Positions 15,985 to 64,000 of a stretch of 64,000 bases of DNA are shown piece by piece. The DNA comes from Podarcis cretensis. Lineage: Eukaryota. The translations under genes and the position numbers were made by a program. Positions within the stretch are counted from its first letter, which is position 1; each line of letters opens with the position of its first letter. A model generated the notes under the pieces. That model searched no databases. It was given only the letters and a program-made list of their open reading frames with translations, and had not been told where the DNA came from. The DNA lies in the NCBI GenBank assembly GCA_951804945.1, contig OX638152.1:51584001-51648000 (forward strand), given 5' to 3'.

Positions 15985-16675
15985 TTATTTATACCCCGCC
16001 CATCTGACTGGGTTTCCCCAGCCACTCTGGATAGCTTAAAAAAAGGTAAAGGTACCCCTGCCCGTACGGGCCAGTCTTGACAGACTCTAGGGTTGTGCGC
16101 TCATCTCACTCTATAGGCCGGGAGCCAGCGCTGTCCGCAGACACTTCCGGGTCACGTGGCCAGCGTGACAAGCTGCATCTGGCAAGCCAGCGCAGCACAC
16201 GGAACGCCATTTACCTTCTTGCTGGTAAGCGGTCCCTATTTATCTACTTGCACCCGGGGGTGCTTTCGAACTGCTAGGTTGGCAGGCGCTGGGACCGAAC
16301 GACGGGAGCGCACCCCGCTGCGGGGATTCGAACCGCCGACCATGTGATCGTCAAGTCCTTGGCGCTGAGGTTTTACCCACAGCGTCGCCCGCGTCCCTAC
16401 CCGCTGGATAGCTTACAGCATATATAAAACATAATAAAGCATCAAATATTTAAAACTTCCCGAAACAGGGCTGCTTTCAGATGTCTTCTAAAAGTTGTAT
16501 AGTTCTTTATCTCCTTGACATCTGAAAGGATTGTGTTATCACAGGGAGGGTGCCACTACCTAGAAGGCCCTCTGCCTGGTTCTCTGTAACTTCGAGTCTG
16601 GCAGTGAGGGAACCAACAGAAGGCCCTCAGAGTAGGGCCTCAGTGTCCAGGCTGAGTGATGGGGGTGGAGACACC
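15951..16675 (-). mobile_element. L2 3' fragment with (ATC)n tail, interrupted by a Sauria SINE
   Basis: Reverse complement resembles 50820-51130; split at the SINE TSD. Confidence 0.85.
16039..16403 (-). mobile_element. Sauria SINE (tRNA head, RTE/BovB-related tail)
   Basis: GGGACGCGGG head, B-box GGTTCGAATCC, ACCTTT tail; 12-bp TSD CTGGATAGCTTA at 16027-16038 and 16404-16415. Confidence 0.93.
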
Positions 16676-34994: not shown

Positions 34995-37511
34995 ATCAGA
35001 TGCAACCTCACTTCAGCTCCATGTATTATGTGTGGCAGGGAAATGTGCATGCATGACATCACAGTTTCAATTCAGTCTGGTTTCTTACAAGTGGATGTGT
35101 GTGAAGGGACAAGCCTCAGGCTTCCACTATATCTCCAATTACACATAAGCCCAGCTGACACAATCTGTGTGCTGCAAAAAAGGGACAGGGGGTTCACATG
35201 GGTGGCATCTAACTCCATATGCCACAGTAGTTCATACTCGAGGTTCTGGGCATCCTAAGAGAAGGTGCATGAGCATAAAGTACACTGCCTTGCTCCACCA
35301 TATGGAAAATCTAGACACTGGAACCATTTATGAATCAAGACTCATTGTGCCAATCTGGGTGTCATGCCCAGGTGGATGGCCTAAAACAAGCTCTACACAG
35401 ATTTGGATTTTTAAAAAATATTTAAAGCTGAGATTCTGTGCTTTAGATTCTGAGATCTAAAGCTTCTCCGAATCTAAAGTGCAGAAGTTCAGCAAAGACA
35501 CTAATCGAAAACTGTTCTTTGCCCACACGCAAAGAGGGAGCATACTTATAGAGGGAAAACATTAAATGTTCCATAATCCCCAGTTCTTCTTTAGAAAGTA
35601 TAATGGCTGAAATCATTTCTGTTCCCTTTTCACATTTACATTTCTCTGGCGAGAAGGATGGAAAACAGCAACAACTATGTACTCAAGTTTCCTCATACCA
35701 AGCAGCCATCGTAATATGGCAATGAAAGTGACAGGTTGTAAGCACTGACTGGAGCATTTGAAATGGCATGCTGCCTTATCCCCTGAAAGCATGATAAGAT
35801 ACTGTTCTAAATAAGCAGCCAGTCCCACATTGTGCTAATGCAATATTAATTATTAGAGAGGCATAATAAAGGAAATTCAAGTCGTATTATTAAGGCTTTC
35901 CTGCATCACAGCTGAGAAGACAGAGGGCGGCTTCTAAACAAACAGATTATGTGGCCCAGGGCAGAGCTCAGCAAGCAATCTGCAATTATGTCTGCTCACA
36001 AGAGTGCTGTATTGAGTTATTGTGGGCAGTCCCAAAGGGAAAGGCTCTAGTGGCATAATGATTATTACAGATGCATTATTAAATATCCACATTTTGTTCA
36101 TTTGATCAAGGTGCCAACGGTATACTTCCATTTCTATTCTGCAATTAATATGTGTTGCATGAAAGAAATGGCAGATGAAATGTACAATTCCTTTCAAAAG
36201 CCGAGACAAATAACCATGAATGGGGAAAGACTAAACATAACTAAAAGTATTAAGCTTTTTCTGTTTTGAATGTGTACATTGACTAAGTGCTACCTGAATA
36301 GATCAATAAAGATTATTTTTTTATGAAAAAAAAATTGAGGGGTATTTGAAAGACACTTTGTTAATGTTTTAATGGACCACGGCTTTAGCATATAGCAAGG
36401 TATAAAAACAGATTGTGAAAGAAAATGTTGCAGATTTATTTGCAGGTAATGAAGAGCTCTGAAGAGTTTTGTGTGTGCAGTTAAAACAGAGCAACAAGGA
36501 TGTAAAAAAATTAAAAGGAAACTTAACTTTTTTAAAAAAAAATCTATGTTGCTGTGCTTTAACATAATTAAAATAAGAATTTAGTGCTCATCAATACTCC
36601 ACAGGTGACAGTCTCACTTCTTGAAAAGCCTATGGACCTAGAAATATACCTGATTGGTTTTGGTGTGTATGTGTTAATTGACATCATGCTTTGATTTAGG
36701 AGATGACCAACATACCACACCAGATCACCCCAGTTGGCCTTATTCAGCTCCCATACAGAGCTGAATCAAATCCCTAGGTTCTACTAGCAGAGGAAGCCTG
36801 GAGACTGGTTGTACTTAAAGTTAATTCTTTCTGCCTGAATGCAACACAGGAGTTCTCCTCTTCCTCGCCCTGTAAATAAGCCACAAAGTGACAGAATGCA
36901 AACCTCACTTTTAGAATGCTGTATTCAGTAAGCTTTGGGCTGCTTTGGTCTGGTTGCCTTGGAGGTAAGACAAAATAAAATAAAATATTCACATATGATT
37001 CGTCCATATTGTAAATGACATGACAGGGTGTCCATTAGGAAATCAAAGGTATAAATATACACATCTTACACCCTGGAGAGATGTCAGTGTCCCAGCTTCC
37101 CATCATAGCATTATTTTGAAGTCTCAATTTAAAAGCGGACACCATCATGGACCCATTCCAGCCATTTTTTTATAACAAAAGATTTTTGAAAAACTTTATT
37201 CTTTTCCAGATCCTGTTTAATCTTGGCTATTATCATATGCTGCAAGTGTCCCAGAAAAACTAGGATATCCCCCTTTTTTTTATAGTGAGAGAATGGTGGC
37301 CACTGGTTTTGCAGGCAGCAAAACCAACACAGCAGCAATGGGAGGATTCTCATTTCTTCCTCCCCCACCTCCACATTTTCAAAAAGTTTCTCAAGCAGGT
37401 TCCTGCTGACTGTTCCATGTAGCCGGCAGGCAACAAAATGGGTGACAGACAATTCTTGCATTTCTTTCACTACTTCCACAATGGGTATCATTGGGCCACT
37501 TACTACGGTAT

Positions 37512-54210: not shown

Positions 54211-55415
54211 GGGGGGGTGATTTATTTATTTTTTAAAGAGAGAATTTCTTCACCCACACTTGTTAAACACAGTGGCAGGGAAGTCAGTTTGCTGGTCAAC
54301 TTGACCACCTAGTATTTGACTACTGACAAATATCCACAAAGGCACTGATACTTGAGGAATTGGCCAACTGCCTGCTTAGCACAACTTAGCCTGTACATAC
54401 TGACTTCAGGATTTTTAACATGCATCTCCACACCTCTGGAGTATGTTTGTAACCTGCTTTACGAGAGAATACTGCTATATATGTAGATATAGGAGAGATG
54501 CATAATGAATGATTCCTGCATCTTCCTTTCATACTTCAACTGCAAAGTCCAAAAGAGAAACTCATTCATATTTCCCCACAATGGAACGTGTGTACTAACA
54601 TCAGTGCCCAAACCATATGAGTCCAAACCATCTGTAGGAGAAAAAAACGTATAATTTAGCTAACAGAACAGAAAAATAGTTTTGAGTCTAAAACAGCACT
54701 GAAGGTGAAACATGACTTCTATAATATGATAGGAGCGTAATGCAATATTGTTGAAGCAGAAAAACACGCATCATAAAAAGTAAACACCACTTCTCAGAAG
54801 CATAATCCTGTTCATTTTTCTAAACTTATTTAGAAAGAAGGCTGTAGGTGAGGCAGGAATTTGCTTATTTAGTATTTGATTTTCTATTTTTCATGCTCTT
54901 AATGCAACATTTTGCCAGACTTGATCTCTGATTAGTCATCCTCCCAGAGAAGGTGGAGAGGAACAGCTTTGAAATTGTATTATTTTTTCTTTTTTACACT
55001 TTCGCTGCTCAGGCTGATGGTTCATGCAGCCACTTTATAATCACCCACTTAAATCCTATAACATACTCAAGCCTGGCTGCTTTTCAGTTGATCTGCCCTT
55101 GCTCGTATTTGTAAACATTCAGGGGCAATTTCAAGTATTCTGTTAAACCAAATGTTACATTGCATAGATGAGTCACCACCACCACCACCAGCAAATACTG
55201 TCAAAATATATCTTTCCCCTTGGAGTTAATGCTTTACTTGAATAAGCTGCTAGGCTGTCTGAATAAGTGAGGATAACTTGTTCCACTTGCAAAATGAGTC
55301 CTGCAGGAGGAAAAAGGACAACCAAGGCACAACTGTGACCCAAACACAGCACATGACCTGATAAGCTAAATCCATTAGAATCAATATAATAACTATTCCT
55401 ATTAACAGTACCATA

Positions 55416-55776
55416 GGGACGCGGGTGGTGCTGTGGGTAAAACCTCAGTGCCTAGGCCTTGCCGATTGCATGGTCGGCGGTTTGAATCCCTGCGGCGGGG
55501 TGCGCTCCAGTCGTTCGGTCCCAGCGCCTGCCAACCTAGCAGTTCGAAAGCACCTCCGGGTGCAAGTAGATAAATAGGGACCGCTTACCAGCGGGAAGGT
55601 AAACGGCGTTCCGTGTGCTGCGCTGGCTCGCCAGATGCAGCTTGTCACGCTGGCCACGTGACCCGGAAGTGTCTGCAGACAGCGCTGGCTCCCGGCCTAT
55701 AGAGTGAGATGAGCGCACAACCCTAGAGTCTGTCAAGACTAGCCCGAAAGGGCAGGGGTACCTTTACCTTTACCTT
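55416..55776 (+). mobile_element. Sauria SINE
   Basis: GGGACGCGGGTGG head, (ACCTTT)3 tail; 16-bp TSD TATTAA(C/T)AGTACCATA at 55400-55415 and 55777-55792. Confidence 0.95.
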
Positions 55777-56456
55777 TATTAATAGTACCATAAGTACAAC
55801 ACAGGCTGGCAGTGGCAGAGGTGCACACCATTTGAAAACTGAAGGCTGCTAAGATACATAGGCCTGATACATGCATGCAATCTCATCATGACTGATATGA
55901 ACGGACGGCTTGGACACAGAAATGTGCTATTGGTGACTGTGATATCACAGGCAGAACTTCTATAGCATCTCAAACACAATGCTTTTTGATGGGAGTTCAC
56001 TCACCCATTCAGCTTCTTGTAGGGAACTGAAATCCATGCAGTGCTCTGATCTGAGGCTTAGCAATGTTGAACATTTTTATATTTGTAACTGAGAGTATCA
56101 ATTTGTAAATCATGAGTGTAATTATTAACTTTTAAAAAAATATAAATTCAATATCTAAAGTCTTTCCTCTGGTTTCCTCTACTTAGCTCTGTCTTTCTTA
56201 CAGCATGTTGAGGTGACTGCTCAAAGTATGGATAGCGGAAGGAGCATTTGTGCAAACCCCTCCCCATAAGCCACCACACATATCACACACTCCTCAGTCC
56301 CTGACAGAAGCACCATCTTCTCAAGTTGATTGAGGGGGCCTGCTGCAACATCCTGATGCCACAAGCACAATGTTCAGATGTCATGCACACGGCATCCTGA
56401 TGTTGTGCACATGACATGTGTGGCTTTATGACATTGCAATGTTGTAAGGAGCCAGG

Positions 56457-56584
56457 CCCCTTCATGGATCACTGCCTTGCCGTGGCGAAGGGGCTTGAAG
56501 AACTCAGAGAAGCTATGAACTATGCCGAGCAGGGCACCCAAGATGAACAGGTCATAGTGGAGAGTTTTGACCAAACGTGATCCA
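56457..56584 (+). ncRNA. Candidate HDV-like self-cleaving ribozyme at the BovB 5' end
   Basis: Hand-folded P1 7/7 bp, P2 8/8 bp, P3 GCC/GGC, L3 UUGCCGU, P1.1 G-C, P4 and J4/2 CCAAA, in the HDV order; begins at the first base after the TSD. Confidence 0.65.
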
Positions 56585-56635
56585 CCTGGAGGAGGAATCG
56601 GCAAGCCACTCCAGTATCCCTGCCAAGAAAACTCC

Positions 56636-59600
56636 ATGGACAAAGACAACAGGCATATAAAAGTTATGACGCTGGAAGATGAGCCCCTCAGGTCGGAAGG
56701 CGTCCAACATGCTACTGGGGAAGAGCGGAGGGCAAGTACAAGTAGATCCAGAGCTGATGAAGCGGCTGGGCCAAAGCCGAAAGGACGCTCAGTTGCGGAT
56801 ATGCCTGGAAGCGAAAGGAAAGTCCAATGCTGTAAAGAAAAATATTGCATAGGAACCTGGAATGTAAGAACCATGAACATGGGTAAGTTGGAGGTGGTCA
56901 AAAATGAGATGGCAAGAATAAATATTGACATCCTGGGCATCAGTGAACTAAAATGGACGGGAATGGGTGAATTCAGTTCGGATGACCATCATATCTACTA
57001 CTGTGGGCAAGAAACCCGTAAAAGAAATGGAGTGGCCCTCATAGTCAACAAAAGAGTGGCAAAAGCTGTACTGGGTTGCAATCTCAAAAATGATAGAATG
57101 ATATCGATACGAATCCAAGGCAGACCTTTTAACATCACAGTAATCCAAGTTTATGCACCAACTACTGGTGCTGAAGAAACTGAAATTGACCAATTCTATG
57201 AAGACTTACAACACCTTATAGAAGTGACACCAAAGAAGGATGTTCTTCTCATTATAGGGGATTGGAATGCTAAAGTAGGGAGTCAAGAGATAAAAGGAAC
57301 AACTGGCAAGTTTGGCCTTGGAGATCAAAACGAAGCAGGGCAAAGGCTAATAGAGTTCTGTCAAGAGAACAAGCTGGTCATCACAAACACGCTTTTCCAA
57401 CAACACAAGAGACGACTCTACACATGGACATCACCAGATGGGCAGCATAGAAATCAGATTGATTATATTCTCTGCAGCCAAAGATGGAGAAGCTCTATAC
57501 AGTCAGCAAAAACAAGACCTGGAGCTGACTGTGGCTCAGATCATCAGCTTCTTATAGCAAAATTCAAGCTTAAACTGAAGAAAGTAGGAAAAACCACTGG
57601 GCCGGTAAGATACAATCTAAGTCAAATCCCCTATGAATACACAATGGAAGTGAGGAACAGGTTTAAGGATTTAGATTTGGTGGACAGAGTGCCTGAAGAA
57701 CTATGGATGGAGGCTCGTAACATTATACAGGAGGCAGCAACGAAAACCATCCCAATGAAAAGGAAATGCAAGAAAGCAAAGTGGCTATCCAATGAGGCCT
57801 TACAAATAGCGGGGGAGAGAAGGCAAGCAAAATGCAAGGGAGATCGTGAAACATACAGGAAATTGAATGCAGATTTCCAAAGAATAGCAAGGAGAGACAA
57901 GAAGACCTTCTTAAACAAGCAATGCAAAGAAATAGAGGAAAGCAATAGAATGGGAAGAACCAGAGATCTGTTCAAGAAAATTGGAGATATGAAAGGAACA
58001 TTTCGCACAAAGATTTCCATAATAAAGGACAAAAGTGGAAAGGACCTAACAGAAGCAGAAGACATCAAGAAGAGGTGGCAAGAATACACAGAGGAATTAT
58101 ACCAGAAAGAAACGGATGTCTCATATACCCCAGGTAGTGTGGTTGCTGACCTTGAGCCAGACATCCTGGAGAGTGAAGTCAAATGGGCCTTAGAAAGCAC
58201 TGCAAATAACAAGGCCAGTGGAAGTGATGGTATTCCAGCTGAACTATTTAAAATTTTAAAAGATGATGCTGTTAAGGTGCTACACTCAATATGCCAGCAA
58301 GTTTGGAAAACTCAGCAGTGGCCAGAAGATTGGAGAAGATCAGTCTACATCCCAATCCCAAAGAAGGGCAGTGCCAAAGAATGCTCCAACTATCGCACAA
58401 TTGCACTAATTTCTCACGCTAGCAAGGTTATGCTTAAAATTCTACAAGGAAGGCTCAAGCAGTATGTGGACCGAGAACTCCCAGAAGTGCAAGCTGGATT
58501 TAGAAGAGGCAGAGGAACCAGAGACCAAATTGCAAACATGCGCTGGATTATGGAGAAAGCTAGAGAGTTCCAGAAAGACATTTACTTCTGCTTCATTGAC
58601 TATGCAAAAGCCTTTGACTGTGTCGACCATGGCAAACTATGGCAAGTTCTTAAAGAAATGGGAGTGCCTGATCACCTCATCTGTCTCCTGAGAAATCTCT
58701 ATGTGGGACAAGAAGCTACAGTTAGAACTGGATATGGAACAACTGACTGGTTCAAAATTGGGAAAGGAGTACGACAAGGCTGCATTTTGTCTCCCTGCTT
58801 ATTTAACTTATATGCAGAATTCATCATGCGAAAGGCTGGGCTGGATGAATCCCTAGCCGGAATTAAGATTGCCGGAAGAAATATCAACAACCTCAGATAT
58901 GCAGATGACACAACCTTGATGGCAGAAAGTGAGGAGGAATTAAAGAACCTTTTATTGAGGGTGAAAGAGGAGAGTGCAAAATATGGTCTGAAGCTCAACA
59001 TCAAAAAAACGAAGATCATGGCTACTGGTCCCATCACCTCCTGGCAAATAGAAGGGGAAGAAATGGAGGCAGTGAGAGATTTTACTTTCTTGGGCTCCAT
59101 GATCACTGCAGATGGTGACAGCAGCCACGAAATTAAAAGACGCCTGCTTCTTGGGAGAAGGGCAATGACAGGCCTAGACAACATCTTGAGAAGTAGAGAC
59201 ATAACCTTGCCAACAAAGGTCTGTATAGTTAAAGCTATGGTTTTCCCAGTAGTGATGTATGGAAGTGAGAGCTGGACCATAAAGAAGGCTGATCGCCGAA
59301 GAATTGATGCTTTTGAATTATGGTGCTGGAGGAGACTCTTGAGAGTCCCATGGACTGCAAGAAGATCAAACCTCTCCATTCTGAAGGAAATCAGCCCTGA
59401 GTGCTCACTGGAAGGACAGATTGTGAAGCTGAGGCTCCAATACTTTGGCCACCTCATGAGAAGAGAAGACTCCCTGGAGAAGACCCTGATGTTGGGAAAG
59501 ATGGAGGGCACAAGGAGAAGGGGGCGACAGAGGATGAGATGGTTGGATAGTGTTTTCGAGGTTACCAGCATGAGTCTGACCAAGCTGCGGGGGGCAGTGG

Positions 59601-59668
59601 AGGACAGGAGTGCCTGGCGTTCTCTGGTCCATGGGGTCACGAAGAGTCGGACACGACTAAACGACTAA
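56636..59668 (+). CDS. BovB APE endonuclease / reverse transcriptase
   Basis: GTWNVRT, GDWNA, GSDH, FIDYAKAFD, GVRQGCILSP and YADD motifs; no stops; first ATG at 56636 (frame open from 56558). Confidence 0.95.
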   Translation: MDKDNRHIKVMTLEDEPLRSEGVQHATGEERRASTSRSRADEAAGPKPKGRSVADMPGSERKVQCCKEKYCIGTWNVRTMNMGKLEVVKNEMARINIDILGISELKWTGMGEFSSDDHHIYYCGQETRKRNGVALIVNKRVAKAVLGCNLKNDRMISIRIQGRPFNITVIQVYAPTTGAEETEIDQFYEDLQHLIEVTPKKDVLLIIGDWNAKVGSQEIKGTTGKFGLGDQNEAGQRLIEFCQENKLVITNTLFQQHKRRLYTWTSPDGQHRNQIDYILCSQRWRSSIQSAKTRPGADCGSDHQLLIAKFKLKLKKVGKTTGPVRYNLSQIPYEYTMEVRNRFKDLDLVDRVPEELWMEARNIIQEAATKTIPMKRKCKKAKWLSNEALQIAGERRQAKCKGDRETYRKLNADFQRIARRDKKTFLNKQCKEIEESNRMGRTRDLFKKIGDMKGTFRTKISIIKDKSGKDLTEAEDIKKRWQEYTEELYQKETDVSYTPGSVVADLEPDILESEVKWALESTANNKASGSDGIPAELFKILKDDAVKVLHSICQQVWKTQQWPEDWRRSVYIPIPKKGSAKECSNYRTIALISHASKVMLKILQGRLKQYVDRELPEVQAGFRRGRGTRDQIANMRWIMEKAREFQKDIYFCFIDYAKAFDCVDHGKLWQVLKEMGVPDHLICLLRNLYVGQEATVRTGYGTTDWFKIGKGVRQGCILSPCLFNLYAEFIMRKAGLDESLAGIKIAGRNINNLRYADDTTLMAESEEELKNLLLRVKEESAKYGLKLNIKKTKIMATGPITSWQIEGEEMEAVRDFTFLGSMITADGDSSHEIKRRLLLGRRAMTGLDNILRSRDITLPTKVCIVKAMVFPVVMYGSESWTIKKADRRRIDAFELWCWRRLLRVPWTARRSNLSILKEISPECSLEGQIVKLRLQYFGHLMRREDSLEKTLMLGKMEGTRRRGRQRMRWLDSVFEVTSMSLTKLRGAVEDRSAWRSLVHGVTKSRTRLND

Positions 59669-61621
59669 ACAACAACAACAACAAAGGAGCCAGGGGTGGA
59701 GCCAAACACCCTCTGAACATTGAGGGGGGCAAGCCTCCTCAAAAATAACCTGGGGGGCCGCGAAACTGCCTTGACTCCCAGGAGCTGGAATGTATGGTTG
59801 CTGACCATCCTGAAGTTAATGAAGAAAAGTCTACAGGAGCCTTTGATATGCATTTGCTTGAACATGAGGAGACCTCAACATGATCAGGGACCCTGATGTA
59901 GCAGGTTACTTATGTTCAAGCAAATGATACAGAGATGATGTGATAATAAAATGACAGAACTATCAGCTATACAACTATACAAATATTATCAGGGTTGCCA
60001 CACACAATATCAACCATCTTACTACCTAGTCCCATAACCATCTCCTTTTCTTCTTGCTTGAGCTTGGATAGGATATTTGGCTCTTTCACAAGTGTTGGAA
60101 ATCTATTAAATGTAATTTGCTTAAAATCAGTGACAATGGCCTGATCTTGGAAGGCTAGTGAGAATGGCAGCAGAATAATTAACTGCTAATTTCATTAAAT
60201 TTTAAAATGGGGAAAAATCTGTGCTTAACAGAACTGCACAAATATACAGTTAAGTTTTATCTCTTGGTGAAGAAACCCCATTTGTACTAAATTACTCCAT
60301 GATTTATATTTTCCATTTCACCAGGTCATGAAAGATTCAGCAGATAGCTGAATAAATTGTTTAAATATGCAAATCTTTGGGGCATTTAGTAATATTTCTC
60401 CAAGGATTTCATTCCAGTGCTTCTTGCCTCATCGCTCAAAAGAACATGAATCAGAAGAGGAAGTATATTGCATTTTAATTTACTACATGTTTATTTTAGC
60501 AGCAGTTAGTGCATATAGTGCATTCTCATTTTCTCGGGAGATTCTCAGGAACATGCAACACTTTGGGAATAAAGAAGGAAACTGAGATCATTCAGTCATG
60601 AGCTGGCAGGGACAGAATATAATATGAAGATGGTACATTAATATTGTTATTTGTGGCTTGATTTACTAAGTGCCTGGGAAGCTACCAATTCCACTTAAGT
60701 CAATGGGAGCTGCAAGTGTTTGGTACTCCAGAAAAACAAATCGTTATTGTATGTAGTATTATACAGTAAAACCTATTAAACCCTCATAAAGTTGCAATTA
60801 ATGAGCTGCAGCACATGCATGTTATAAGTGCTGAGCACCTCTCTCTTAGCATTTCTATATAATAAGGTACCCCTTAAATAACATGCAGAAGATCTTGAGA
60901 TGCTAATGAAATACACCTGTCAATGCAATTTTAAGTTAGAACTCAAATGCGGTTTATTTCACTGCTGAAATTTGGCAACACAAATAATCAAAACCACACT
61001 TTGTGTCACAATGTGAAAGACAGGCAACGCATGCCAACCATGTGTTTAACTAGGGACACACAGGACTAAATGCAATTAAAGTTTACTCTGAGCCAACCCA
61101 CTGCAACTAATGCACCTAAGTTAGTCATATCCATTCATTTTAATGCGTCTGCTATGTGTACGATTAGAATTGTATGCAACCTACAGTCTATGCTTACTTT
61201 GCAATTCTACAGCCCTGCTCACTTTGCTTGCCAACCCCACCCACCTCTCCTTTTACCCCTCACCAGCCTCATTCCCCCTCCCTCTTCACACCTCACCAAC
61301 CCCCATTTTATACTTTACTAACCCCCCTCTGCACCTTACAATAATCCGTGACTGTTGGCCATGCTAGCTAAGGATGATAGGAGTGTCACAGCATCTGGAA
61401 AGCACAAAGTTGAGGAAAGCTGCTTTATTCAATTTGCACTTGTGAAACGCCCCCTCCTCAGAAATGTATTACAAATTTCATCTAGAAAAGTGCACTTCTC
61501 TTAAGGAAGAGGGAATACACTGTATTGTTACACACTACCCCAATCTCCAAGCGGTGTAAGATTCCAGGAGTTTCAGATGATTACTTAGGGTCCGTGTTTC
61601 CTTTTAGGAATGAGGCATAGC

Positions 61622-63496: not shown

Positions 63497-63724
63497 CTTG
63501 CAACACAAGGGAGTAGGGAAAGTAAATCCCTTTTCCCATCAGAGCAATGCTTAATGATAATAACTCTTACTTAACACTGAAGAAAAGAAATGGGAAAGAG
63601 AGCCTTCAAATTACTTGCAGTACAATCCCAGGCAAGTTCATTAAAACTAAGTCCTGCTTAGTTCAGTGTGCCACTTTTTATTAAAAGCATCTTAAATATA
63701 CACACTTACTGCCAGGTAAGTCAT

Positions 63725-64000
63725 AAAGGTAAAGGTAAAGGTACCCCTGCCCGTACGGGCCAGTCTTGACAGACTCTGGGGTTGTGCGCCCATCTCACTT
63801 AAGAGGCCAGGGGCCAGCGCTGTCCGGAGACACTTCCGGGTCACGTGGCCAGCGTGACATCGCTGCTCTGGCGAGCCAGAGTCGCACACGGAAACGCCGT
63901 TTACCTTCCCACCAGTAAGTGGTCCCTATTTATCTACTTGCACCCGGAGGTGCTTTCGAACTGCTAGGTTGGCAGGCGCTGGGACCGAGCAGCGGGAGCG
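63725..64000 (-). mobile_element. Sauria SINE, cut by the window end
   Basis: (AAAGGT)3 tail; body closely matches 16045-16310. Confidence 0.93.

What the first reader, a model, noticed from the sequence alone, without database searches (positions are those of the whole stretch)
56457..56584. BovB 5' end folds into a complete HDV/CPEB3-like ribozyme that starts exactly at the insertion junction
Seen in sequence: P1 CCCCUUC (56457-63) / GAAGGGG (56487-93), 7/7 bp. J1/2 is A56464. P2 UGGAUCAC (56465-72) / GUGAUCCA (56577-84), 8/8 bp. P3 GCC (56474-76) / GGC (56484-86). The 7-nt L3 UUGCCGU has U at position 1 and G at position 6. P1.1 is G56479-C56494 next to U.U. The extended P4 has AGAACUC (56499-505) / GAGUUUU (56562-68) and GCUAUGA (56512-18) / UCAUAGU (56552-58). 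J4/2 is GACCAAAC, with a candidate catalytic C at 56571 or 56572. The 5' TSD ends at 56456, so the predicted cleavage site coincides with the element 5' end. Established: this strand order is the HDV double pseudoknot; CPEB3 has L3 UUCACGU and a one-pair P1.1; HDV-like ribozymes process the 5' ends of R2, L1Tc/ingi and some invertebrate RTE elements. Inference: BovB may excise itself from host read-through transcripts, reducing dependence on a host-specific promoter, which could help explain its wide horizontal transfer. The C1-G first pair and the swapped (G in L3) P1.1 would evade standard descriptors. I do not recall this being described for BovB but cannot check the literature.
Basis: partly seen in the sequence, partly recalled or inferred. 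Interest (0 to 1): 0.88.

Follow-up and report, generated by a model that had tools for sequence, protein, structure and literature searches.

The report
HDV-like ribozyme at BovB 5' end
The first 128 bases of an intact BovB jumping gene in this lizard-like genome very probably fold into a self-cutting RNA of the hepatitis-delta type that trims the transcript to the element's exact first base; this trick is already known for related elements but apparently not reported for BovB.

Summary
Observation confirmed; interpretation largely supported by computation only.

- **The element.** Window 56457-59684 is a full-length BovB/RTE LINE. It has an intact 1010-aa ORF, a (CAA)n tail and a 10-bp target-site duplication that ends at 56456.
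- **The pairings.** A strict HDV descriptor matches shuffled sequence about 2e-7 times per base, and matches the window once, at 56457.
- **Relatives.** Related 5' ends carry the same double-pseudoknot topology with different helix sequences.
  - Two rotifer-type BovB copies (L004, L029) become homologous to each other exactly at P1 base 1.
  - L016 shows 12 double-compensatory pairs against the lizard, 0 single changes and 2 broken outer P4 pairs. Its junctions are conserved: L3, J1/4 CUUG, J4/2 GAC(C/U)AA.
- **Rfam.** HDV-family models align the relatives from the predicted first base (26-32 bits, E 0.003-0.1, all below gathering). For the window an HDV model is the best of 4227 families, but weakly (14.9 bits).
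- **Catalytic C.** By homology it is C56571, with C56572 as the alternative.
- **Limits.**
  - Ruminant-type BovB lacks L3-3'/P3'/P1' and extends further 5', so this is not a pan-BovB feature.
  - The first pair is C-G, not G.U.
  - There are no cleavage or RNA data.
- **Novelty.** HDV-like ribozymes at RTE 5' ends are known (Ruminski 2011), so this is a new member of a known kind.

The parts
56447..56456 (+). 5' target-site duplication AGGAGCCAGG. It may be 11 bp if A56446 is included.
   Evidence: Identical copy at 59685-59694.
56457..56463 (+). P1 5' strand, CCCCUUC. Predicted cleavage is 5' of C56457.
   Evidence: 7/7 WC with 56487-93. P1 stays at 7 bp in L004, L029, L016 and L026, with different sequences.
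56465..56472 (+). P2 5' strand, UGGAUCAC. A56464 is J1/2 and U56473 is J2/3.
   Evidence: 8/8 WC with 56577-84. 4 of 7 pairs are doubly compensated against L016. The ruminant type has GGACCAC/GUGGUCC and L006 has CCAUGCCC/GGGCAUGG at the same places.
56474..56486 (+). P3 (GCC/GGC) enclosing L3, UUGCCGU. U56477 and G56482 sit at the positions of HDV U20 and G25. G56479 pairs with C56494 as P1.1.
   Evidence: The relatives have ACC/GGU and L3 of the form U-Y-N-N-C-G-U. The Rfam RF02682 alignment places P3 and L3 here.
56487..56493 (+). P1 3' strand, GAAGGGG.
56494..56496 (+). J1/4, CUU. C56494 forms the single Watson-Crick P1.1 pair, and U56495 lies opposite U56478.
   Evidence: L016 has the identical CUUG. 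The P1.1 pair covaries: G-C, U-A, C-G.
56497..56570 (+). Extended P4 domain, with helices 56499-505/56562-68 and 56512-18/56552-58.
   Evidence: MFE of the domain. Five basal pairs are kept in L016, two by double change; the outer two are broken. Primary similarity to L016's P4 domain gives z 3.8.
56571..56576 (+). J4/2, CCAAAC. The candidate catalytic cytosine is C56571, with C56572 as the alternative.
   Evidence: It aligns with L016 CUAAGA. L025's CCAAAG is aligned by the Rfam drz-agam-1 model to its J4/2. All relatives fit C-N-A-A.
56577..56584 (+). P2 3' strand, GUGAUCCA. This is the 3' end of the ribozyme.
56586..56614 (+). Conserved 5'-UTR hairpin directly 3' of the ribozyme: CUGGAG/CUCCAG around a conserved loop.
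   Evidence: The stem covaries: rotifer type CUGAAG/CUUCAG, ruminant type CUGGAG/CUUCAG. L005 and L006 also pair there. Function unknown.
56636..59668 (+). Intact BovB ORF of 1010 aa (AP endonuclease plus reverse transcriptase). The frame is already open from 56567.
   Evidence: 95% identity to a Podarcis muralis protein; Pfam PF03372, PF14529, PF00078.
59669..59684 (+). 3' (CAA)n tail.
59685..59694 (+). 3' target-site duplication AGGAGCCAGG.

Best explanation
Bases 56457-56584 encode an HDV-like (double-pseudoknot) self-cleaving ribozyme. It forms the 5' terminus of a young, intact squamate-type BovB/RTE LINE.

Proposed mechanism (inferred, not shown here):
1. An RNA that starts upstream of the element, for example a host read-through transcript, folds into P1/P1.1/P2/P3/P4.
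2. A cytosine in J4/2 (C56571, or C56572) and a bound Mg2+ catalyse attack of the 2'-OH of G56456 on the 56456/56457 phosphodiester.
3. The released RNA starts with a 5'-OH at C56457. Full-length reverse transcription therefore regenerates a copy beginning at exactly this base, with the ribozyme intact.
4. By analogy with R2 and other RTE ribozymes, the folded 5' end may also protect the uncapped RNA and help translation of the ORF 52 nt downstream.

Shown here: the fold, its position at the junction, its conservation by compensatory change, and its resemblance to HDV-family models.

Inferred: cleavage, the identity of the catalytic C, and the role in transcription-independent mobilisation.
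For: 1. All helices are present and perfect in a copy with an intact ORF and a perfect TSD.
2. The strict descriptor hits 2e-7 per base in shuffles and hits the window only at 56457.
3. The element's first base, defined independently by the TSD, is P1 base 1.
4. In the rotifer-type copies L004 and L029 (91% and 84% aa identity to Rotaria), mutual homology begins exactly at their P1 base 1. Their terminal 7-mer CUCUCAU pairs 7/7 with the 7-mer abutting P3.
5. Lizard against L016 gives 12 doubly compensated pairs, 10 identical, 0 single-sided and 2 broken (outer P4). L3, J1/4 and J4/2 are nearly identical in sequence.
6. The P1.1 pair covaries in three flavours, and P3 switches between G-C and A-U.
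7. Rfam covariance models:
   - RF02682 is the top hit of 4227 families for the window, starting at 56457 (14.9 bits, E 1.1).
   - L029 scores 32.3 bits (E 0.005), L004 26.3 and L026 26.6 (plus 31.1 against RF00094); these start at the predicted first base.
   - L025 scores 31.6 bits against drz-agam-1 (E 0.003); its hit begins at 118, a few bases from the first base predicted from the descriptor.
   - 20 other RTE loci give no HDV hit.
8. The ribozyme fold is energetically competitive: about -31 kcal/mol for P1+P3+P4 plus about -11 for P2, against -38.7 for the pseudoknot-free MFE.
9. Active HDV-type ribozymes at RTE 5' termini are established (PMC7936874, PMC5786205, PMC3774820, all citing Ruminski et al. 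2011).
Against: - No cleavage assay and no RNA 5'-end data.
- The first P1 pair is C-G, not the usual G.U (or G-C) with G at +1. The effect on catalysis is unknown, although C1-G is shared by the lizard, L004, L029 and L016.
- P1.1 is a single pair next to U.U.
- The Rfam score for the window (14.9 bits) is far below gathering (44), and all relatives are also sub-threshold.
- The compact 3' half seen in the rotifer copies (short P4 hairpin, GCUAA, proximal P2') is not present in the lizard. The lizard relies on a distal P2 across a roughly 75-nt P4 domain.
- The covariation rests on five or six sequences aligned by hand on structural anchors, most of them metagenome contigs of inferred origin.
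- Ruminant-type BovB lacks the core, and L006 keeps P2/P3/L3/J4/2 without an obvious P1. The P2-closed domain may therefore have a second function.
- At this locus G56456 could pair with C56494, extending P1 and competing with P1.1.
Confidence: 0.74

Rival explanations
1. The fold descends from a ribozyme but is catalytically weak or dead in this lineage. It is kept as a structured 5' module, for example to protect an uncapped RNA, to start translation without a cap, or to bind the ORF protein. The 5' end would then be set by something else.
For: - C-G at the cleavage-site pair, a one-pair P1.1, and loss of the compact J4/2-P2' arrangement seen in L004 and L029.
- The P2-closed domain survives in ruminant-type copies that have lost P1'/P3', and in L006, which has no clear P1. 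This points to a function for the domain beyond cleavage.
- R2-type ribozyme folds are reported to protect RNA 5' ends and promote translation (PMC13708176, PMC7761336).
Against: - P1 has turned over at 5 of 7 positions between lineages while staying perfectly paired and staying flush with the element terminus. That is what selection for cleavage at that bond predicts.
- J4/2 keeps the C-N-A-A motif, and L3 keeps U1 and G6.
- A non-cleaving fold would not explain why copies begin exactly at P1 base 1 in two unrelated hosts.
Confidence: 0.14
2. The 5' end is a transcription start fixed by an internal or downstream-acting promoter. The pairings are a 5'-UTR structure unrelated to self-cleavage.
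For: Many LINEs use internal promoters. BovB transcription is uncharacterised in the papers I could search. MFE statistics for the region are unremarkable.
Against: This does not explain:
- the precise HDV strand order;
- the HDV-type L3 and J4/2 motifs;
- the covarying P1.1;
- the Rfam HDV-family hits in the relatives.
Confidence: 0.07
3. Chance complementarity in a single copy.
For: A loose descriptor finds 38 hits in the window, including one of fair quality at 35020. The scan looks at very many windows.
Against: - The strict rate is 2e-7 per base and the position was fixed in advance by the TSD.
- The same architecture recurs with compensated helices in L004, L029 and L016.
- The Rfam hits start at the same register.
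Confidence: 0.03

Closest known systems
HDV-like self-cleaving ribozymes at the 5' termini of non-LTR retrotransposons (R2, R4, Baggins, L1Tc, RTE). Source: Ruminski et al. 2011 J Biol Chem, as cited in PMC7936874, PMC5786205 and PMC3774820. The paper itself was not held.
   Same: - Same element clade (RTE).
- Same position, with the ribozyme's first base being the element's first base.
- Same double-pseudoknot strand order.
- Same proposed role: 5' processing of co-transcripts, and possibly translation initiation.
   Different: - The host element is the BovB subfamily in a squamate-type genome. I found no paper linking BovB or Bov-B to a ribozyme.
- +1 is C paired with G.
- The P1.1 pair is G(L3)-C(J1/4) rather than C-G.
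- P4 is an approximately 75-nt domain.
Rfam RF02682 (HDV-F-prausnitzii), RF01787 (drz-agam-1) and RF00094 (HDV ribozyme)
   Same: - The models align P1, P3, L3 and, in the relatives, P4 and J4/2 in register from the first base.
- The L3 consensus UCUaCGU compares with UUGCCGU here.
- The J4/2 consensus CUAAGA or CuaAca compares with CCAAAC here.
   Different: - All scores are below gathering: window 14.9 against 44; relatives 26-32 against 37-50.
- The models do not score P2/P1.1 (drz-agam-1 scores P2 but not P1), and they penalise the long P4.
CPEB3 ribozyme (mammalian HDV-like ribozyme). Features are recalled from memory and were not tested here.
   Same: A single Watson-Crick P1.1 pair next to a U.U, and a 7-nt L3 of the form UU-N-N-CGU.
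   Different: - CPEB3 is intronic and not at a transposon terminus.
- It has G1.U and a short P4.
- Rfam's CPEB3 model gave no hit on the window at E<=10.
Truncated twister ribozymes at the 5' ends of RTE elements, such as Perere-3 of Schistosoma mansoni (PMC8501958, PMC7761336)
   Same: Same clade, same 5'-terminal position next to the TSD, and the same processing logic.
   Different: A different ribozyme class. This shows that RTE 5' ribozyme modules are interchangeable.

Membership tests
HDV-like ribozyme | Nested double-pseudoknot strand order: P1-P2-P3-L3-P3'-P1'-(P1.1)-P4-P4'-J4/2-P2'. | tested here: met
   The strict descriptor hits once in the window, at 56457.
HDV-like ribozyme | A 7-bp P1 beginning at the cleavage site, with P3' abutting P1'. 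| tested here: met
   7/7 WC, 56457-63 with 56487-93. P3' 56484-86 directly precedes P1'. The same holds in L004, L029, L016 and L026.
HDV-like ribozyme | G at +1 forming a G.U wobble (or G-C) as the first P1 pair. This is usual but not universal: the RF02682 consensus has G-C. | tested here: not met
   C56457-G56493. C1-G is shared by L004, L029 and L016, while L026 has G.U. The consequence for catalysis is unknown.
HDV-like ribozyme | A 3-bp P3 with an L3 of about 7 nt carrying U at position 1 and G at position 6 (the equivalents of U20 and G25). | tested here: met
   GCC/GGC with UUGCCGU. L3 is U-Y-N-N-C-G-U in all relatives.
HDV-like ribozyme | P1.1 between L3 positions 2-3 and the two bases after P1'. 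| tested here: met
   There is one WC pair, G56479-C56494, plus U.U. The pair covaries: G-C (lizard, L016), U-A (L004, L029, the latter with an added C-G second pair), C-G twice (L026).
HDV-like ribozyme | A catalytic cytosine opening J4/2, followed by N-R-A, just 5' of P2'. | tested here: met
   C56571-C-A-A-A-C, then P2'. It aligns with CUAAGA (L016), CUAAC (L026), CGAA (L004, L029) and CCAAAG (L025).
HDV-like ribozyme | Helices supported by compensatory substitutions. | tested here: met
   12 double, 0 single and 2 broken against L016. 5 of 7 P1 pairs are doubly changed against L004. Caveat: few sequences, and structural anchoring done by hand.
HDV-like ribozyme | A score at or above the Rfam gathering threshold for an HDV-family model. 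| tested here: not met
   14.9 bits against 44 for the window; 26-32 bits for the relatives.
HDV-like ribozyme | Site-specific, Mg2+-dependent self-cleavage giving 5'-OH and 2',3'-cyclic phosphate ends. | not testable with these tools
RTE-clade 5'-terminal ribozyme | The ribozyme occupies the extreme 5' end of a full-length RTE element, flush with the TSD. | tested here: met
   The TSD ends at 56456. L004/L029 homology starts at P1 base 1.
RTE-clade 5'-terminal ribozyme | Presence across the BovB subfamily. | tested here: not met
   Ruminant-type copies (92-95% aa to Bos/Moschus) lack P3'/P1' and extend 5'. Of the other RTE loci scanned, 20 gave no HDV hit.

The most novel reading that the evidence does not exclude
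The squamate-type BovB 5' ribozyme is a portable, promoter-independent 5' module.
- It lets a newly arrived element be mobilised from any host read-through transcript, which would favour horizontal establishment.
- It is exchanged between distant RTE lineages. L016 has an ORF only about 32% identical, yet its ribozyme and P4 domain are significantly similar in sequence.
- It was later deleted in ruminants, by an 18-nt deletion between CTTG repeats, once a GC-rich repeated 5' extension, presumably a promoter, had been acquired.
Probability: 0.3. Interest if true: 0.75.

Novelty: new member of a known kind. Interest (0 to 1): 0.57.

Why it matters
BovB is the textbook case of horizontal transposon transfer among vertebrates, yet how it is transcribed and how its exact 5' end is made are not described in the literature I could search.

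- A self-cleaving 5' ribozyme would explain the sharp 5' boundary of full-length copies.
- It would explain how an element without a known promoter can be mobilised from read-through transcripts in a new host.
- It gives a simple, testable contrast between squamate-type copies (ribozyme present) and ruminant-type copies (core deleted, longer 5' region).
- It adds a natural HDV-like variant with C at +1 and an inverted P1.1 pair, which standard descriptors and Rfam thresholds miss.

Tried and rejected
I could not fetch the 5' ends of the squamate, Varanus, Anolis, Paragonimus or mite homologues found.

**Searches that gave nothing useful**
- The viral-contig scan found no relatives.
- The genome-contig scan gave only ruminant-type contaminant fragments, none with a useful 5' end.
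- There is no second BovB copy in the window.
- Ruminski 2011 and Webb 2009 are not held.

**Approaches that failed**
- A covariance model built from L004 and L029 (R1) was too sequence-specific. It found L016 (13.8 bits) but not the window, even with filters off. I do not count this as evidence against the fold.
- My looser descriptor v2 (P2 of at least 4 bp) gave many false hits and was dropped.
- MAFFT alignments (A2, A3, A7, A8) misplace gaps inside P1 and P2. I therefore did not run the count of structure pairs, and tabulated the pairs from structural anchors in Python instead.

**Unresolved cases**
- L006 keeps P2, P3, L3 and J4/2, but I found no P1 partner next to P2. The only option is a distant G.U-started candidate at 97-103, which would need a 95-nt J1/2.
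- L025 and L044 are weaker candidates. L025 is supported only by the drz-agam-1 hit.
- No TSD was found for L004.

**Contigs and sequence handling**
- L028 (a contig labelled human gut metagenome) was only part of bulk scans and was not studied individually.
- I took no contig for human DNA.

Full report
**1. What is in the window**

Bases 56457-59684 are a full-length RTE/BovB LINE on the + strand.
- It has one open frame, with ATG at 56636 and stop at 59668 (1010 aa). The protein has AP-endonuclease and reverse-transcriptase domains and is 95% identical to a Podarcis muralis protein.
- It ends in a (CAA)n tail.
- It is flanked by a perfect 10-bp target-site duplication, AGGAGCCAGG, at 56447-56456 and 59685-59694.
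- The copy is therefore young, and its first base is fixed independently of any RNA model: C56457.
- No other BovB fragment lies in the window.

**2.

- P1 is 7/7, P2 is 8/8 and P3 is 3/3, with P3' abutting P1'.
- L3 is UUGCCGU, and G56479-C56494 can form P1.1.
- The two P4 helices appear in the minimum-energy fold of the P4 domain.

I wrote an HDV descriptor to measure chance.
- A strict form required P1 7 WC, P3 3 WC, L3 of 6-9 nt, P2 of at least 8 WC and a C in J4/2. It matched 4 times in 150 dinucleotide shuffles of both strands, about 2e-7 per base. It matched the real window once, at 56457.
- A loose form matches about every 3.4 kb, so stringency matters.
- Ordinary MFE statistics are unremarkable (z -1.2), as expected for a pseudoknot.
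- The ribozyme fold is energetically competitive with the pseudoknot-free optimum: about -31 kcal/mol for P1+P3+P4 plus about -11 for P2, against -38.7.

**3. Independent model-based support**

- Scanning 56440-56600 against all 4227 Rfam families puts an HDV family on top (RF02682). The alignment starts exactly at 56457 and puts P1, P3 and L3 in register. The score is weak: 14.9 bits, E 1.1, against a gathering score of 44.
- The long P4 and the pseudoknotted P2, which that model does not score, explain part of the deficit.

**4. Relatives**

That scan gave 80 loci.

- **Rotifer-type copies (L004, L029).**
  - They are 91% and 84% identical in protein to Rotaria socialis, and 59% to the lizard.
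  - Just upstream of a 5' UTR homologous to the lizard's, they carry P1 CUCUCAU/AUGAGAG, P3 ACC/GGU, L3 UUUACGU or UCUGCGU, and a J4/2 of the CGAA or CUAA type.
  - The two copies sit in different flanks. Their mutual homology begins exactly at P1 base 1, at L004 643 and L029 136.
  - Rfam aligns both end to end to RF02682 from that base: 32.3 bits at E 0.005, and 26.3 bits.
  - They have two alternative 3' closures. One is a compact 78-nt form. The other is a distal P2' at the position homologous to the lizard's.
- **L016.**
  - Its ORF is only about 32% identical, but its ribozyme region resembles the lizard's in primary sequence. The whole region gives z 3.1, and the P4 domain alone gives z 3.8.
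  - Helix by helix against the lizard, 12 pairs are changed on both sides, 10 are identical, none is changed on one side only, and only the two outermost P4 pairs are broken.
  - The junctions are almost unchanged: L3 UUGCCGU against UUGUCGUU, J1/4 CUUG in both, J4/2 GACCAAAC against GACUAAGA.
  - Variable helices with conserved junctions are the signature of a functional RNA.
- **More distant RTE elements.**
  - L026 has a textbook HDV-like ribozyme at the same place: G1.U, a two-pair P1.1 and CUAAC. It scores 26.6 bits against RF02682 and 31.1 against RF00094.
  - L025 hits drz-agam-1 at 31.6 bits (E 0.003), with CCAAAG in J4/2.
  - Twenty other RTE loci gave no HDV hit. The signal is therefore specific, not a property of RTE 5' regions in general.

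**5. Refinements**

- The P1.1 pair covaries: G-C in the lizard and L016, U-A in the rotifer copies (plus a C-G second pair in L029), and C-G in L026.
- By alignment with L016 and L025, the catalytic cytosine is most likely C56571 (C-C-A-A-A-C before P2'). C56572 remains possible.
- C1-G as the first pair is shared by the lizard, L004, L029 and L016. It looks like a subgroup trait rather than a lesion. It still departs from the usual G+1, and its catalytic cost is unknown.

**6. Limits of the claim**

- Ruminant-type BovB contigs L001-L003 are 92-95% identical in protein to Moschus and Bos.
  - They keep P2 with a compensatory change (GGACCAC/GUGGUCC) and keep a J4/2-like GACAGAAU.
  - They lack about 18 nt, consistent with a deletion between two CTTG repeats. 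That removes the 3' part of L3, P3', P1' and J1/4.
  - They continue more than 300 nt further 5' into GC-rich repeats shared by L002 and L003.
- The ribozyme is therefore a feature of the squamate/rotifer-type 5' end, not of all BovB.
- L006 (50% aa identity) keeps P2, P3, L3 and J4/2 but shows no convincing P1.
- These two cases hint that the P2-closed domain has an additional role.
- At this locus G56456 could pair with C56494 and slow folding.

**7. Literature**

- Full-text searches for BovB or Bov-B together with ribozyme returned nothing relevant. The same was true for HDV-like ribozyme with lizard or snake.
- The kind of feature is well known. Active HDV-type ribozymes at the 5' termini of R2, RTE and other LINEs are cited in PMC7936874, PMC7761336, PMC3774820 and PMC5786205.
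  - All of them point to Ruminski et al. 2011, which I could not read.
- RTE elements of Schistosoma use a twister variant instead (PMC8501958).
- I therefore class this as a new member of a known kind. It has variant features: C+1, an inverted P1.1 pair and a large P4.

**8. Earlier notes of this scan**

- It also flagged a mini-BovB that joins the 5' and 3' termini (s1-836369), and an HDV-like fold at the 5' end of a non-coding retroelement (s1-836303).
- These are unchecked notes. If true, they mean the 5' base and the fold recur among copies, and that the 5' terminus is retained in non-autonomous derivatives.

**9. Verdict**

- The fold is real, non-random and conserved by compensation, and it belongs to the HDV-like class (about 0.85).
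- That it actually cleaves at 56456/56457 and so defines the BovB 5' end is the best explanation (about 0.74), but it is untested.
- The link to horizontal transfer is speculation. It is compatible with, but not supported by, the loss of the core in ruminants.

Noticed in passing
window 56586-56614: There is a conserved hairpin directly 3' of the ribozyme: CUGGAG/CUCCAG around a loop whose sequence is conserved (GAGGAAUCGGCAAGCCA). The stem covaries in rotifer-type copies (CUGAAG/CUUCAG), ruminant-type copies (CUGGAG/CUUCAG) and in L005, L006 and L018. It could be a protein-binding or translation element of the BovB 5' UTR.
   Followed up: partly
L003 1-340; L002 1-110: The ruminant-type BovB 5' region extends upstream of the ribozyme-homologous part into GC-rich tandem repeats of about 100 nt (self-match 28-156 against 130-254). 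This may be an acquired promoter region that replaced the ribozyme.
   Followed up: partly
L004 643-774; L029 136-268: The rotifer-type copies offer two alternative closures for the same 5' half. One is a compact 78-nt ribozyme (P2 ACGUGCA/UGCGCGU, J4/2 GCCAA or GCUAA). The other is a distal P2' (GCAC-UCGGACU, preceded by CGAA). They could be stacked as one interrupted P2, or they could be competing folds.
   Followed up: partly
L016 934-1081: This RTE element has an ORF only about 32% identical to the lizard BovB, yet its ribozyme and P4 domain are significantly similar in primary sequence (z 3.1 and 3.8). That suggests the 5' ribozyme module is exchanged between RTE lineages.
   Followed up: partly
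L006 181-320: This BovB-like 5' UTR (50% aa identity) keeps P2 (CCAUGCCC/GGGCAUGG), P3 ACC/GGU, L3 UUCUCGU and J4/2 ACGAAC. It has no P1 strand next to P2. The only candidate is GAGUCGC at 97-103, which would need a 95-nt J1/2.
   Followed up: partly
window 55414-55771 (+), 16042-16399 (-), 63723-63988 (-): Three copies of a roughly 360-bp interspersed repeat, 91-94% identical to each other. ARAGORN calls no tRNA in it, and there is a weak Rfam pRNA-like hit at 55417-55502. It is probably a SINE. It produced a spurious loose-descriptor hit at 16118 and 55695.
   Followed up: partly
L004 445-526: A near-perfect hairpin (inverted repeat) of about 80 nt lies roughly 120 nt upstream of the rotifer BovB copy. 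It hits several miRNA-precursor models on both strands (48-50 bits, below gathering). It looks like a MITE-type or foldback repeat.
   Followed up: no
window 56567-56635: The BovB reading frame is already open 69 nt upstream of the first ATG. It starts inside the P4 3' strand and runs through J4/2, P2' and the conserved hairpin. This may be coincidence, or it may reflect non-AUG initiation close to the ribozyme.
   Followed up: no
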